Below are positions 20,701 through 63,765 of a stretch of DNA of 64,000 bases, piece by piece; the first letter of the stretch is position 1; the number at the start of each line of letters is the position of its first letter. This stretch comes from Paragordius varius (Eukaryota > Animalia > Nematomorpha): positions 8,990,001 through 9,054,000 of the forward strand of contig OZ176055.1 of NCBI GenBank assembly GCA_964247055.1, given 5' to 3'. The notes under the pieces were generated by a model. That model made no database searches and was not told the DNA's origin. It was given only the letters and a program-made list of their open reading frames with translations. Both the position numbers and the translations under genes were made by a program.

Positions 20701-23700
20701 CTATTATAATTATAATATATGTTTAGATCCGACTAAATATCAAGAGTCTATGAAAAAAATCAACTCGTTCATGACCGATCTCATTGAGAATCAAGTGGCT
20801 AGTAGTACATTCTTGTTAGTATTCTCCCAATTATTATCACGTATTTGTCACACAAACGACAGTGTTTGGAAAGTTTTAAAACTGTTTCTTTCAACCCTAC
20901 TTACGCATCATGTTGAAAAATGTTTTTGGCTTATAACAGCCGTTTTTAAATCTCAGTTACCTCAACGCATACAAAGATGTAAAGAGATTTGTCTCCAAGT
21001 CTTTGCAAACAATACAAGTATAAACTTTTTTTCTTTTACTAATGTTTCATAGGAGTTTCAAAATATATAAATGATGCCATTCAACTGGCTGATAAGCTGT
21101 TGGAAATAGCGGCCAAACCCATCGAAACTGTCATTGATGTTAAATTATCGAGAGAATTTCGTTACCTACCCAAGTATTAAATTAATGAAATATAGTTATT
21201 GTAATTATTTTATCGAATTAAAAAGCACAGAATTTTTCTCACATTTATATCAATTATACTCATTTTTATGATGAAAGATTGTTTGAAAACACCGAATTCA
21301 GCCAAATCCTACTCCCCATTCAATCTCAACTAAACTTGTATGCTAATGGTAAAAGTAATTCAAAACCAATGATTAATTCAAATCCTCTAAAAAATGGTAA
21401 AAGATTGAAGCAAGACCATTCAAGTGAACAAACCCCTACCTATATTTTCATTGTCAACGTAAAAGATGAAATTGAAGTTATACAATCGCAACAAAAACCA
21501 AAGAAAATTACGTTTCTAGCTTCGGATGGTAGGTTTTATTTTTGATTAAAAATTGTTTTTTTTTCATTTTTTTCTAGTTCAAATTAATGATGAGTTGTTG
21601 GAAAGAAGGGTTGATTTTGATATGGTTGTGTAACCCTATAAATATATATGTTTTTAGGCCAATTCTATAGTTTGTTGTGTAAACCCAAGGATGATTTACG
21701 GAAAGATTTTCGCTTAATGGAATTCAACATGCTGGTAAACTGTTGTTTGAAACAAGCATCCGATTCTCGTAAAAGAAACCTAAGTATAAAAACTTATAGC
21801 GCTATACCTCTCAATGAGGATTGTGGATTGATTGAATGGGTTAATCATGTACAACCGCTACGAACTATCCTTATAAAGTTATATCAAGTAAAAAAATGCT
21901 AAATAATATGAGATAAATTTGAATTTATTTTTTTTTGTAAAATTTTTTTGGATTTTATGTTTAAACAACCATTTAATATTCCAAAATTTGATACCATTGA
22001 TACATATTATTTTGATTAATGAATTATAGAGTAAAAATTACAATTATACGAATAAAACGTTAACACAAAAATACAAATTTTTCTCTTTCAAAAGATATAC
22101 TTTTTCAACCTTGATATATATAAAGTTTATGATAATAATTTTGAAATATATAAATGAGTGTATGACCTAGTTACATTTTTATCCCTTATTTAACACAAAA
22201 CGAAGGGATATCGTTGTCTTTTTTTAAGAAATATTTGTCTTTTAAATTTCATGTTTTCTCCGTATAATTTCAATTTTTACTGTAATATACCATTTACAGT
22301 TTAAATTCACCCTCGAACACTTCAAATTCACCCTAAAAATAAATTTTGTCGTTTCGAACTAATATAACTCCTTATTAATATAAAATATATCTTTATGGCA
22401 TAGTTAATTTTTTTTTTCAGTATTATTTGAATTTAAAACAAAATTTTATATTTTTGAAAATATATAAAAATATAGGTAATTTTTAATCTTAAAAAACATA
22501 TAATATATTTGAGGGTTAATTTGAATTGTTCAAGGGTGATTTTAAATTGTTTAAGGGTGAATTTGAATTGTAAATGGTATAAATATATTTTATAATTTAT
22601 TGTAGTCTATTACATTTTCTGTCTGAATAATTAATTAATTAGGAGGAAGGCAAATACTTGAGTACAAAAGAATTATTTTCCTACAAAATCCCAGTAACTC
22701 ACAATAAAACCAAAAAATTGGATGCATATCAAAAACTTGTAAAGTATTATTCACCGCCCATATTTTGTGAATGGTTCCGACGCAATTTTGATGAAACTTC
22801 TCTGTGGTATTATTTTTTGCTCTATATTTGAATTAATGAAATGATAAAATTTATCAGAGTGTTTTACAGTAAAAACCGAAATTATACGGGCAAAAAGTAC
22901 AAAATATAAAGACCCAATATTTTTTTCTAAAAGACACAACCATAATTTTATAAACCTTAGTTTTACTCATATAAATTATATAATTACAATTGTAAAATAT
23001 ATAATTGATTGTGTAACCAATATACATACCAATATACACTTTGCAATTTTAGACAATGAGTTATCTTTTAAAAAATGAAGTTTAAAAAGTATGGTGATAT
23101 GTCTTTTAAAAAAAAATTTTTCTTTATATTTTTAGGTTTTGTCCGTGTAATTTCAATTTTTACTGTACTAATTATAAAATTTTAAATCTAACCAAAGTCC
23201 CCTATGTATGTTTTATAAAAAAAACTTCCAAACTAAATGGTTTCGATTCTGATTTTATAGTTTTCCAGGTAAATGATTTTGATTTGTTTAACTTTTTTTC
23301 GATATATTTATTTTGTTACAAATAAGTGAATCACCAAAAACCCAAAAGTGAAAAAAAATTATATTCTGATTTTTACTGAAATGAAACTGAAAAAAAAGTA
23401 CCCATTATATCAAACATAATTATTATAAAGCTATATATTGCCGCGTTTAAAAACTGCGGTTTCGTTTGTAAAAGGGAATTTAAGATAGTTTTTTTTGGTT
23501 TCAAAATTAAATAAAAGCTAATAGTTTCGGTTCCAATCCCTTATATATATCCACCTTTTTGAAAATAACTCCAAGGAAATATCAGTAAAATAAATATTAT
23601 TTTTATTAATGAAAAATTTTGGTTAGACACAGCTCACTTATTTTTTAAATTACAGTCATGTATCCTTTATTTTATCAAAAATTTATTTATTTTTTTCCTT

Positions 23701-62907: not shown

Positions 62908-63765
62908 ATGCCTGCTGTATCTGTAAAAGACGTAGACCAACAGGAATTCGTTGATGAATTAGCTTCTTTTATCAAAAAGTATGCATTTTAGATCTCTTAC
63001 ATGTATTTTTACATGTTTGGTTTGCAAATTTGCTATAAAATTATGGTTTTAAATTAATGCTTATAAAACCTTTCCATTAATTTAGGAGTGGGAAAATAAA
63101 GCCGCCAGAATTTGCTGAATATGTCAAATTAGGTACTATGAAAGAACTGGCTCCTTATAATGAAGATTGGTATTATGTACGTGCAGGTATAAAAATTTAT
63201 ATTGTAGCATCGATGGCAAGACATTTATATATTCGAACTCCTGCTGGTGTTGGTTCTTTTACCAAAATTTATGGAGGTATATTATGTGTTTGTTAAAATT
63301 ATTTTATAGCCCGTAAAAACAATGGAGTAATGCCAAGTCATTGGGTGCGTGGCTCCTCTTCTATAGCCAGAAAAGTTTTACAATCGCTTGAACAAATGAA
63401 CCTTATTGAAAAAGATAAAGTTAAAGGGTAATACATTTTGCCTATACACTAAAATTAATTATTAAGAATTAAAAGTTATATAATAGACAGATACATTTTA
63501 GTAAACCTTGATTTTTAAATAATTTTATTATTACAGTCATAGAATATGCTTCATTTCTATGCAATATTTTGTAACTAAAAATAGATTATATTTTCAAAAA
63601 ATCAATAAATGTATAATCTTATAAGTTTTACATTTTGTCTCTATAATTTTAACTTTTACTGTATTTAGTGGTCGTAAACTCACAAGTCAAGGGCGAAGAG
63701 ATTTGGACCGAATAGCTAATCAAATTCATAAGAGGAAACATGCAATTGATGTTGAAGATGAATAA
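62908..63765 (+). CDS. RPS19: 40S ribosomal protein S19 (eS19), 151 aa
   Basis: Exons 62908-62978, 63086-63186, 63208-63276, 63310-63427, 63669-63765 give [151 protein letters not shown]. Confidence 0.97.

What the first reader, a model, noticed from the sequence alone, without database searches (positions are those of the whole stretch)
21018..63309. Bimodal intron architecture: eight 21-37-nt micro-introns beside kb-scale introns in the same genes
GT-AG introns inferred from frame and protein continuity: 35 nt (ATR 21018-21052, with TACTAAT), 37 and 27 nt (orphan gene), 26 nt (integrin 53337-53312), 29 and 22 nt (MTR3), 21 and 33 nt (RPS19). The same window has introns up to ~2.4 kb full of transposons. 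Lineages known for such tiny introns usually have compact genomes, whereas this genome is repeat-rich. Inference: the spliceosome handles both ultra-short intron definition and exon definition, which may require altered U2/SF3b/U2AF architecture.
Basis: partly seen in the sequence, partly recalled or inferred. Interest (0 to 1): 0.8.

Follow-up and report, generated by a model that had tools for sequence, protein, structure and literature searches.

The report
Tiny 21-37-base introns beside kilobase introns
Ordinary genes of this AT-rich worm-like animal are interrupted by real-looking introns only 21-37 bases long, next to introns of hundreds to thousands of bases. Introns under 30 bases are published for only two other animal groups, but no RNA could be examined to show the cutting.

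Summary
All eight segments lie at the stated places and begin with GT and end with AG.

- **Supported by protein homology (six):** removing the ATR 35, integrin 26, exosome-subunit 29 and 22, and RPS19 21 and 33 nt segments restores an unbroken match to known proteins.
- **Conserved positions:** the RPS19 21-nt intron sits at the same codon and phase as 2-7.5-kb introns in a spider, a bird and an annelid. The 33-nt one matches an annelid intron. The ATR one matches a 1.6-kb intron in the hairworm Gordionus.
- **Open-frame logic only (two):** the orphan-gene introns of 37 and 27 nt.
- **Long introns in the same genes:** up to about 2.35 kb, filled with tandem repeats rather than shown transposons.
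- **Beyond the window:** I found eight more micro-introns (PSMB4, RPL23, RPL27A, ferrochelatase). A rough survey of 83 intron gaps gave 14 at 19-31 nt, none at 32-45 and 69 at 46-3,844.

The idea of an altered spliceosome is not supported. U1, U2, U5 and U6 are present, the recognition sequences I could read (U1, U2) are canonical, and SF3B1 and SF1 are present. No RNA evidence was reachable.

This scan had already noted the same thing many times on other DNA of this genome. Verdict: a new animal lineage for a recently published kind of intron.

The parts
14762..26072 (+). ATR kinase gene. It has a giant first exon (14762 to about 20075) followed by short exons.
   Evidence: Pfam FAT, HEAT_ATR and PI3_PI4_kinase; tblastn of Gordionus ATR against the window.
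21018..21052 (+). ATR micro-intron of 35 nt, phase 1, with TACTAAT (branch A at -11). An alternative acceptor would give 38 nt.
   Evidence: Human ATR is collinear across it. Gordionus has a 1,588-nt phase-1 intron at the 5' edge of the orthologous exon.
21175..21230 (+). ATR intron of 56 nt, phase 0.
   Evidence: Read from the sequence. It corresponds to the 1,882-nt Gordionus intron after residue 2526.
21529..21657 (+). ATR intron of 129 nt.
   Evidence: Read from the sequence. Its removal restores ...LASDG|[12 protein letters not shown], and the kinase domain continues.
29745..30315 (-). Orphan gene: about 168 codons in three exons, with an N-terminal hydrophobic anchor.
   Evidence: ORFs and sequence. 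No Pfam family, paralogue or Atlas hit.
30021..30057 (-). Candidate micro-intron of 37 nt in the orphan gene. Unverified.
   Evidence: GT..AG, with an in-frame TAA if retained. It joins two open frames. There is no homology support.
29922..29948 (-). Candidate micro-intron of 27 nt in the orphan gene. Unverified.
   Evidence: GT..AG, ending in an in-frame TAG if retained. There is no homology support.
32586..53398 (-). Integrin beta gene: signal peptide, PSI, beta-I domain, EGF repeats, tail domain, transmembrane and cytoplasmic exons.
   Evidence: Pfam PSI_integrin, Integrin_beta, EGF_integrin, Integrin_B_tail and Integrin_b_cyt on ORFs in gene order; exon trace.
53312..53337 (-). Integrin micro-intron of 26 nt, phase 1, between the signal-peptide exon and the PSI exon.
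   Evidence: Frame logic from the sequence and the PSI profile starting at position 1 in the next exon.
49306..51628 (-). Integrin long intron of about 2.35 kb (approximate bounds), between the DLYYLMD exon and the FGSFVDK exon. It holds a 231-nt tandem array.
   Evidence: Exon trace, Pfam Integrin_beta 36-122, Tandem Repeats Finder.
53447..54768 (+). RNase PH-type exosome subunit gene.
   Evidence: Pfam RNase_PH. PDB hits to archaeal Rrp41, yeast Ski6, and human RRP41 and MTR3.
53493..53521 (+). Micro-intron of 29 nt, phase 1.
   Evidence: GT..AG, and retention shifts the frame. The downstream exon starts at RNase_PH profile position 7.
53791..53812 (+). Micro-intron of 22 nt, phase 0, with an in-frame TAA if retained.
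   Evidence: RNase_PH profile runs 7-89 then 93-130 across it.
62908..63765 (+). RPS19 (eS19) gene, five exons.
62979..63085 (+). RPS19 intron 1, 107 nt, codon 24, phase 2.
   Evidence: Sequence. Spider and bird exons break at the same residue.
63187..63207 (+). RPS19 micro-intron of 21 nt, codon 58, phase 1. Its length is a multiple of three with no stop, so retention would add 7 residues.
   Evidence: 7-residue gap against PDB eS19 and profile continuity. Same codon and phase as introns in a spider, a bird and an annelid.
63277..63309 (+). RPS19 micro-intron of 33 nt, codon 81, phase 1.
   Evidence: Profile runs 55-76 then 78-113. Same codon and phase as an intron of about 1.0 kb in the annelid Ridgeia.
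63428..63668 (+). RPS19 intron 4, 241 nt, at the residue 119/120 boundary, phase 2.
   Evidence: Sequence. The exon boundary is shared with the spider, bird and annelid.

Best explanation
These are genuine U2-type GT-AG spliceosomal introns that have shrunk to 21-37 nt (mostly 21-30). They occur in a bilaterian animal whose closest available relative is the hairworm Gordionus (Nematomorpha).

They are probably recognised across the intron by an ordinary major spliceosome:
- U1 pairs with GTA/GTT at the 5' end.
- U2 pairs with a TAAY-type branch site 6-13 nt upstream of the 3' end.
- A short T-run and TAG mark the acceptor.

This leaves only about 8-20 nt between the 5' splice site and the branch point.

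Micro-introns come in runs within a gene, often near its 5' end. They sit in the same transcripts as ordinary introns of 50 nt to several kb that contain tandem repeats.

**Shown:** GT-AG ends, restoration of frame and homology, shared intron positions with other animals, a separate length class, and canonical snRNAs.
**Inferred:** actual excision in RNA, use of the branch site, and intron-definition recognition.
For: **Homology collinearity across six of the eight window segments.**
- RPS19.
- Exosome subunit.
- ATR.
- Integrin PSI exon.

**Intron position and phase.**
- The RPS19 21-nt intron shares codon 58, phase 1, with introns of 2.1 kb, 7.5 kb and 1.95 kb in a spider, a bird and an annelid.
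- The RPS19 33-nt intron shares codon 81, phase 1, with an annelid intron of about 1 kb.
- The ATR exon at 21053-21174 is flanked by 35- and 56-nt introns. The orthologous Gordionus exon is flanked by 1,588- and 1,882-nt introns.

**Eight further micro-introns outside the window, each with Pfam or sequence collinearity.**
- PSMB4: 25 and 27 nt.
- RPL27A: 25 nt. RPL23: 25 nt.
- Ferrochelatase: 22, 22, 30 and 27 nt.

**Splice signals in all 16.**
- 16 of 16 are GT..AG, and 15 of 16 have T at -3.
- The TAAY motif has its A at -6 to -13 in 12 of 16.
- With a window of -7 to -14 the count is 7 of the first 10, against a 12.6% background, P about 4e-5, chosen post hoc.
- In the six found later it is 3 of 6, P = 0.03.

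**Length class.** A rough survey from exon-level Pfam hits gave 83 gaps: 14 at 19-31 nt, 0 at 32-45, 13 at 46-100 and 56 above 100.

**Splicing machinery.** U1, U2, U5, U6, SF3B1 and SF1 are present, and the recognition sequences I could read (U1, U2) are canonical.

**Lineage.**
- Gordionus ATR gives the highest summed score, 574 bits against 478 for the next.
- It shares the giant first exon.
- Gordionus GC content is 26.9%, against about 27% here.
Against: - **No RNA evidence.** No transcript, EST or same-species protein could be reached. Records of this genome seem to be withheld from the protein collections.
- **Two segments could be coding.** RPS19-21 and ferrochelatase-30 are multiples of three without stops, so they could be retained as short insertions in some or all transcripts.
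- **The two orphan-gene introns have no homology support.**
- **The survey lengths are estimates.** They come from hit coordinates, not from read splice sites, and they miss introns flanked by very short exons.
- **Micro-introns are unevenly spread.** The TCP-1 family showed none among 32 gaps.
- **The lineage assignment rests on one gene plus base composition.**
Confidence: 0.82

Rival explanations
1. Splicing such tiny introns needs a remodelled spliceosome, with changed U2 snRNA, SF3b or U2AF, or U2AF replaced by SPF45/PUF60-type factors.
For: A distance of about 8-20 nt between the 5' splice site and the branch point is far below what human and yeast spliceosomes are known to accept (my own knowledge). 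No U12 snRNA was found, so some spliceosome simplification has occurred.
Against: - U2, U1, U6 and U5 are full length. The U2 GUAGUA and the U1 ACUUACCUG are intact.
- The SF3B1 N-terminal domain and the SF1 helix-hairpin are present.
- The published myxozoan case also found canonical U2 and U2AF1/2 (PMC13644364).
- The micro-introns carry ordinary signals.
Confidence: 0.12
2. Some segments are not removed but translated. Those whose length is a multiple of three with no stop (RPS19 21 nt, ferrochelatase 30 nt) would then be small lineage-specific insertions, or retained alternatively.
For: Read-through of RPS19 63081-63275 is an open frame. Ferrochelatase L035 5282-5566 is one open frame that Pfam aligns as a single stretch.
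Against: - Both segments begin with GT and end with TAG, are 13-14% GC and resemble the other 14.
- The RPS19 one sits at exactly the codon and phase where three other animals have an intron.
- It would insert GIKIYIV into a region where none of the aligned solved eS19 sequences has extra residues.
- The other 14 would break the frame or introduce stops.
Confidence: 0.06
3. The segments are removed from DNA, as with ciliate-type internal eliminated sequences or germline-restricted DNA, or they are assembly errors or pseudogene lesions rather than RNA introns.
For: No RNA data were available, so removal at the RNA level is not shown directly.
Against: - 16 of 16 have GT..AG rather than TA..TA ends, with T-runs and branch-like motifs.
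- The positions are orthologous to ordinary introns in other animals.
- The host genes are essential single-copy genes with otherwise intact frames (RPS19, RPL23, RPL27A, PSMB4, FECH).
- Random insertions would show GT..AG ends only about 0.2-0.4% of the time (my estimate).
Confidence: 0.02
4. The genome belongs to a lineage in which such introns are already published (Myxobolidae or Dicyemida), so nothing here is new.
For: The length range matches the published medians of 22-27 bp (PMC13644364). The genome is AT-rich, as is Henneguya at 29% GC.
Against: - ATR is closest to the nematomorph Gordionus in score, in identity of the kinase exons (68-70% against 55-63%) and in gene structure.
- RPS19 is about 70% identical to scorpion and annelid proteins, which is not what a very fast-evolving parasite lineage would show.
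- The splice-site motifs are richer (GTAWAA ... TTTTAG) than the reduced 'GTa ... AG' reported for those groups.
Confidence: 0.04

Closest known systems
Ultra-short introns of myxobolid myxozoans (Henneguya salminicola, Thelohanellus kitauei, Myxobolus rasmusseni) and of the dicyemid Dicyema japonicum (Mol Biol Evol 2026, PMC13644364)
   Same: - GT-AG introns of about 20-30 nt in an animal.
- They occupy positions conserved with long introns in other animals.
- Short introns cluster next to other short introns.
- U2 snRNA is canonical.
- Weakly conserved A residues lie a few bases upstream of the AG, as presumed branch points.
   Different: - There the tiny size is the median of all introns. 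Here micro-introns were only about one sixth of the sampled gaps (14 of 83), and most introns are 300-3,000 nt.
- There the splice motifs are reduced to GTa and AG. Here there is a T-run, T at -3 in 15 of 16, and a TAAY motif.
- The host here is closest to a nematomorph, not a cnidarian or a dicyemid.
Tiny introns of ciliates (Paramecium about 25 nt, Stentor 15-16 nt) and of the chlorarachniophyte nucleomorph (18-21 nt). Recalled from my own knowledge; the ciliate cases are also cited in PMC13644364.
   Same: Canonical GT-AG splicing within 15-30 nt, AT-rich introns, and a narrow length class.
   Different: Those are unicellular eukaryotes in which nearly all introns are tiny. Here kilobase introns coexist with them in the same genes.
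Bimodal intron length distributions of flatworms (Schistosoma, tapeworms). Recalled from my own knowledge, not checked here.
   Same: A short-intron class, often in the 5' part of genes, beside long introns in repeat-rich genomes.
   Different: As I recall, the short mode there is about 30-37 nt. Here it is about 25 nt, with cases down to 21.

Membership tests
U2-type (major) GT-AG spliceosomal intron | GT at the 5' end and AG at the 3' end | tested here: met
   16 of 16 micro-introns: 8 in the window and 8 elsewhere.
U2-type (major) GT-AG spliceosomal intron | Removal restores the reading frame and an unbroken match to homologous proteins | tested here: met
   Met for 6 of the 8 window introns and for all 8 extra ones. 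The two orphan-gene introns have frame support only.
U2-type (major) GT-AG spliceosomal intron | Position and phase shared with introns of orthologues in other species | tested here: met
   RPS19 codon 58 phase 1 (spider, bird, annelid) and codon 81 phase 1 (annelid). For ATR, the same exon is flanked by introns in Gordionus with the same phase, but the 5' boundary lies in a linker of variable length. Not tested for the integrin or the exosome subunit.
U2-type (major) GT-AG spliceosomal intron | Branch-point sequence and pyrimidine tract upstream of the 3' splice site | tested here: inconclusive
   The TAAY motif has its A at -6 to -13 in 12 of 16, and there is a T-run. Enrichment over background was P about 4e-5 post hoc on 10 and P = 0.03 on 6 later ones. 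Actual branch use is unknown.
U2-type (major) GT-AG spliceosomal intron | Excision from pre-mRNA, seen as a spliced junction in RNA | not testable with these tools
   No same-species transcripts or proteins could be reached.
U2-type (major) GT-AG spliceosomal intron | Major-spliceosome snRNAs present in the genome | tested here: met
   U2, U1, U6, U5. U4 was not searched.
U12-type (minor) intron | Long conserved ATATCC/GTATCC 5' splice site, TCCTTAAC branch site, and U12 snRNA | tested here: not met
   The 5' ends are GTA/GTT followed by AT-rich sequence. No U12 match was found in the genome, though that search cannot prove absence.
Animal ultra-short intron class (<30-35 nt) as defined for Myxobolidae and Dicyemida | A population of introns below about 30 nt, not isolated cases | tested here: met
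   16 read at the sequence level (21-37 nt, median 26). 14 of 83 homology-derived gaps fall at 19-31 nt, with none at 32-45.
Animal ultra-short intron class (<30-35 nt) as defined for Myxobolidae and Dicyemida | Median intron length of the genome below 30 nt | tested here: not met
   The median of the 83 estimated gaps is several hundred nt, and 56 of 83 exceed 100 nt.
Ciliate-type internal eliminated sequence (DNA-level excision) | TA dinucleotide boundaries and absence from somatic DNA | tested here: not met
   The boundaries are GT and AG. The somatic versus germline comparison cannot be made here.

The most novel reading that the evidence does not exclude
This would be a third, independent animal origin of sub-30-nt spliceosomal introns, in a nematomorph-like ecdysozoan with a 110-Mb repeat-rich genome. 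The micro-introns form a discrete class (about 19-31 nt, mode about 25) that coexists in the same pre-mRNAs with repeat-filled kilobase introns. They are handled by an apparently canonical U1/U2/U5/U6, SF1 and SF3B1 machinery. If so, extreme intron miniaturisation is not tied to whole-genome compaction. An ordinary animal spliceosome could then work with about 10 nt between the 5' splice site and the branch point.
Probability: 0.6. Interest if true: 0.7.

Novelty: new member of a known kind. Interest (0 to 1): 0.6.

Why it matters
Animal introns under about 30 nt were long treated as annotation errors. They were documented only recently, in two highly reduced parasite lineages.

A further lineage would show three things, because here such introns are a minority class beside long, repeat-filled introns in the same genes:
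- Intron shrinkage can act locally, in runs within genes, rather than through overall genome compaction.
- It would give a natural within-transcript comparison of ultra-short and long-intron splicing by one spliceosome.
- It would warn that gene-prediction and read-alignment pipelines with minimum intron sizes of 30-40 nt will mis-annotate many genes of this genome, including ribosomal protein genes.

Tried and rejected
**1. Open-frame joining statistic.** I counted GT..AG segments that join two long open frames and compared them with decoy dinucleotide pairs, on 264 kb. Tandem repeats that are open in several frames swamped the counts. GT-AG showed no excess, so I dropped the approach.

**2. 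Codon-usage score to clean up that scan**. Over 20 codons, coding and random open windows overlap too much in this AT-rich genome. Dropped.

**3. RNA or same-species protein evidence.**
- A word search with the 1,776-residue ATR exon found nothing.
- The 65-residue RPS19 read-through found only relatives at 67% identity or less.
- A profile of a homologue plus the separate RPS19 exon pieces found no protein above about 72% identity to the exons.

**4. More genome sequence.** The Ras, E2 and TCP-1 micro-intron estimates therefore could not be read at the sequence level.

**5. The orphan gene.** Pfam, an own-genome paralogue search and the Atlas gave nothing.

**6. Reverse-transcriptase and transposase ORFs.** Pfam gave no significant hits except a weak hAT dimerisation match, so I do not claim transposons inside the introns.

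**7. Literature.** I found no paper on intron sizes in hairworms. The library lacks most subscription journals.

**Joined sequences.** I built and searched no joined (spliced) protein or junction sequence. All searches were exon by exon, by reference. I fetched and compared no contig that I took for human. The human RPS19 exon numbering I recalled was replaced by tests on spider, bird and annelid loci.
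Full report
**What the window is.** The 64-kb window is AT-rich animal DNA, 22-34% GC in 2-kb bins. It comes from contig C6 of a 110.6-Mb assembly in 44 contigs. It carries five genes:
- an ATR kinase gene (Pfam FAT, HEAT_ATR, PI3_PI4_kinase);
- a small orphan gene;
- an integrin beta gene on the minus strand (PSI_integrin, Integrin_beta, EGF_integrin, Integrin_B_tail, Integrin_b_cyt, in gene order);
- an RNase PH-type exosome subunit, placed head to head with the integrin;
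- RPS19.

Rfam found no RNA gene in the window.

**Check of the eight claimed micro-introns.** All are present and bounded by GT and AG.

*RPS19, 21 nt (63187-63207).*
- Read through, it gives exactly a 7-residue insertion relative to the solved eS19 sequences whose alignments were printed, and the listed hits spanning query 2-65 cover a 57-residue chain span (68 distinct sequences matched).
- The Pfam S19e profile runs 22-53, 55-76 and 78-113 over exons 2, 3 and 4. One profile position is left for each split codon. That also validates the 33-nt intron (63277-63309).
- I fetched RPS19 loci of a spider (Uloborus), a bird and an annelid (Ridgeia) and read their junctions.
- All three have a phase-1 intron in codon 58, of 2.1 kb, 7.5 kb and 1.95 kb. 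That is exactly where the 21-nt segment lies.
- The annelid also has a phase-1 intron of about 1.0 kb in codon 81, exactly where the 33-nt segment lies.
- The other two RPS19 introns (107 and 241 nt) are at shared positions too.

*Exosome subunit.*
- RNase_PH profile positions 7-89 and 93-130 lie on either side of the 22-nt segment at 53791-53812.
- The 29-nt segment at 53493-53521 joins a 15-codon first exon, MARMDGRNFNEIRNL, to the exon that starts at profile position 7.
- Archaeal Rrp41 aligns from its residue 32-33. This fits the family's N-terminal R-DGR-E-R motif, which I know from the family and did not score here.
- The PDB matches favour RRP41 at least as much as MTR3.

*ATR, 35 nt (21018-21052).*
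- Human ATR residues 2114-2191 align to the exon before the segment and 2202-2239 to the exon after it. The residue count is right.
- The acceptor is a TAGGAG tandem, so 38 nt is also possible.

*Integrin, 26 nt (53337-53312).*
- It joins a hydrophobic signal-peptide exon to the PSI exon.
- In the PSI frame there is a TGA 5 nt upstream of the segment and no ATG. The PSI exon therefore cannot start a protein by itself.

*Orphan gene (minus strand, ATG at 30315).*
- Three consecutive open frames are joined by a 37-nt segment (30057-30021) and a 27-nt segment (29948-29922).
- There is no Pfam family, no paralogue in the genome and no Atlas look-alike.
- These two are therefore plausible but unverified.

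**Long introns in the same genes.**
- ATR has introns of about 652, 35, 56, 129, 755 and 1,100 nt and more.
- The integrin has one of about 2.35 kb, between the DLYYLMD exon and the FGSFVDK exon, and several of 1-2 kb.
- These contain tandem arrays with periods of 21-231 nt.
- I could not show transposons inside them. The reverse-transcriptase-like ORFs lie between genes, and Pfam gave only a weak hAT match.

**Is it a class, and does it occur genome-wide?** I could fetch only 200 kb more of the genome.

*Sequence-level cases.* In those 200 kb and in one proteasome locus I read eight more micro-introns with homology support:

| Gene | Micro-intron lengths (nt) |
|---|---|
| PSMB4-like | 25, 27 |
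| RPL27A | 25 |
| RPL23 | 25 |
| Ferrochelatase (four in a row) | 22, 22, 30, 27 |

The ferrochelatase profile runs 1-35, 44-85, 86-165 and 166-197 over the exon pieces.

*Wider but rougher sample.* I used the exon-by-exon Pfam hits that the own-genome search returns for the Ras, UQ_con, Proteasome and Cpn60_TCP1 families. For neighbouring collinear hits, I estimated intron length as the genomic gap minus three times the profile gap.

| Estimated gap length (nt) | Number of gaps (of 83) |
|---|---|
| 19-31 | 14 |
| 32-45 | 0 |
| 46-100 | 13 |
| 101-3,844 | 56 |

- Micro-introns come in runs. One Ras-family gene has about 29, 28 and 23 nt, another about 22, 22 and 19, and an E2 gene 25 and 25.
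- They were absent from 32 gaps in the TCP-1 genes.
- The splice sites behind these estimates were not read.
- The sequence-level set also includes lengths of 33, 35 and 37, so the empty 32-45 interval is not absolute.

*Failed approaches.* An ab initio statistic (GT..AG joining long open frames, against decoy dinucleotides) failed because of repeat noise. A codon-usage filter was too weak.

**Signals and likely mechanism.** Across the 16 micro-introns:
- Length is 21-37 nt (median 26) and GC is 12-28%.
- All 16 are GT..AG. Position +3 is A in 11 and T in 5.
- T is at -3 in 15 of 16 and at -5 in 15 of 16.
- A TAAY motif has its second A at -6 to -13 in 12 of 16.
- With a window of -7 to -14, the motif occurs in 12.6% of YAG-ending 25-mers in this DNA. 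It occurred in 7 of the first 10 (P about 4e-5, but I chose the motif after looking) and in 3 of the 6 found later (P = 0.03).

The snRNAs and factors look ordinary:
- U2 is canonical (177.7 bits, GUAGUA intact).
- U1 has ACUUACCUG.
- U6 (two copies) and U5 (four copies) are full length.
- The SF3B1 N-terminal domain and the SF1 helix-hairpin are present.
- U12 was not found. That is not proof of absence.

The simplest reading is ordinary U2-type splicing by intron definition, with a branch point very close to both ends. Nothing I could test supports a remodelled U2 or SF3b. U2AF, PUF60 and SPF45 could not be tested.

**Whose genome.**
- No close ATR relative shares words with the first exon.
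- An exhaustive profile-free search with 777 residues of ATR gave only distant hits. Among the named hits were a scorpion, echinoderms and the hairworm Gordionus.
- Summed over eight ATR pieces, Gordionus scores 574 bits against 478 for the next species. Identity in the kinase exons is 68-70%, against 55-63%.
- Gordionus ATR also has a giant first exon and the same exon flanked by introns.
- The Gordionus genome is 26.9% GC.
- RPS19 is about 70% identical to scorpion and annelid proteins.

I therefore take the organism to be a nematomorph or a close relative. This agrees with earlier notes of this scan, but it rests on one gene and on composition. Published hairworm genomes are 200-300 Mb, larger than this 110-Mb assembly.

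**What is known.**
- A 2026 paper (PMC13644364) states that introns under about 30 bp were considered absent from animals.
- Among 51 genomes it finds them only in myxobolid myxozoans (medians of 22-27 bp) and in Dicyema japonicum.
- It reports reduced splice motifs, canonical U2 and U2AF, and clustering of short introns. It predicts that more lineages will be found.
- I found no report on hairworm intron sizes. The library is incomplete.

The present case is thus a further lineage of a known kind. Two things differ: micro-introns are a minority class beside long, repeat-filled introns, and the splice signals are not reduced.

**Earlier notes of this scan.** The scan had already recorded the same phenomenon many times on other windows of this genome. 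One earlier agent claimed RNA support at another locus, which I could not reproduce.

**Limits and compliance.**
- No RNA evidence was obtainable.
- All searches were exon by exon, by reference, and the joined step is left out.
- I fetched no contig that I took for human.

Noticed in passing
G000 whole genome: No U12 snRNA match was found in the 110-Mb assembly, while U1, U2, U5 and U6 were found easily. The minor spliceosome may be lost, as in nematodes. The search cannot prove absence, and U11, U4atac and U6atac were not searched.
   Followed up: partly
window 14762-20092 and L050 (Gordionus ATR locus): ATR has a single exon of 1,776 codons here and one of about 2,195 codons in Gordionus. 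I recall (not checked here) that other animals split ATR into dozens of exons. This looks like shared large-scale intron loss in the 5' part of the gene, and it is a possible marker of kinship.
   Followed up: partly
L053 (bird RPS19 locus), about 2166-8124: The 7.5-kb bird intron at RPS19 codon 58 contains at least seven near-identical copies of the first 21-22 codons of the next exon ([22 protein letters not shown]). The exon edge is tandemly amplified inside the intron. Other notes of this scan report something similar for this worm genome.
   Followed up: no
window 38718-38860, 39036-39301, 41433-41511, 45724-45787: A 21-nt satellite (GGTGAATTTGAATTGTTC-like) recurs in both orientations in several integrin introns. 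It is open in several reading frames and gives long spurious ORFs (NSNSP and FELFKGE repeats).
   Followed up: partly
window 53398 / 53447: The integrin beta gene and the RNase PH exosome subunit gene are divergent, with only 48 bp between their start codons. This suggests a very compact shared promoter despite the repeat-rich introns.
   Followed up: no
Its orthology is open.
   Followed up: partly
G000, TCP-1 genes (for example C1:14.86 Mb, C7:1.47 Mb, C2:9.80 Mb): None of 32 intron gaps in the chaperonin CCT/TCP-1 genes was under 67 nt, whereas small GTPase and E2 genes have runs of 19-31-nt gaps. Micro-introns are distributed very unevenly among genes.
   Followed up: partly
G000:C3:257000-528000, C2:11.95-11.99 Mb, C6:565000-633000: U2 and U1 snRNA genes occur in large clusters with many degraded copies. 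There were 46 U2 matches and 17 U1 matches, many below the family cut-off.
   Followed up: no
window 56402-57630: ORF fragments resemble a hAT-type transposase (FRCLIHQQNL...), with a weak Dimer_Tnp_hAT match at E = 0.007. They lie between the exosome subunit gene and RPS19.
   Followed up: partly
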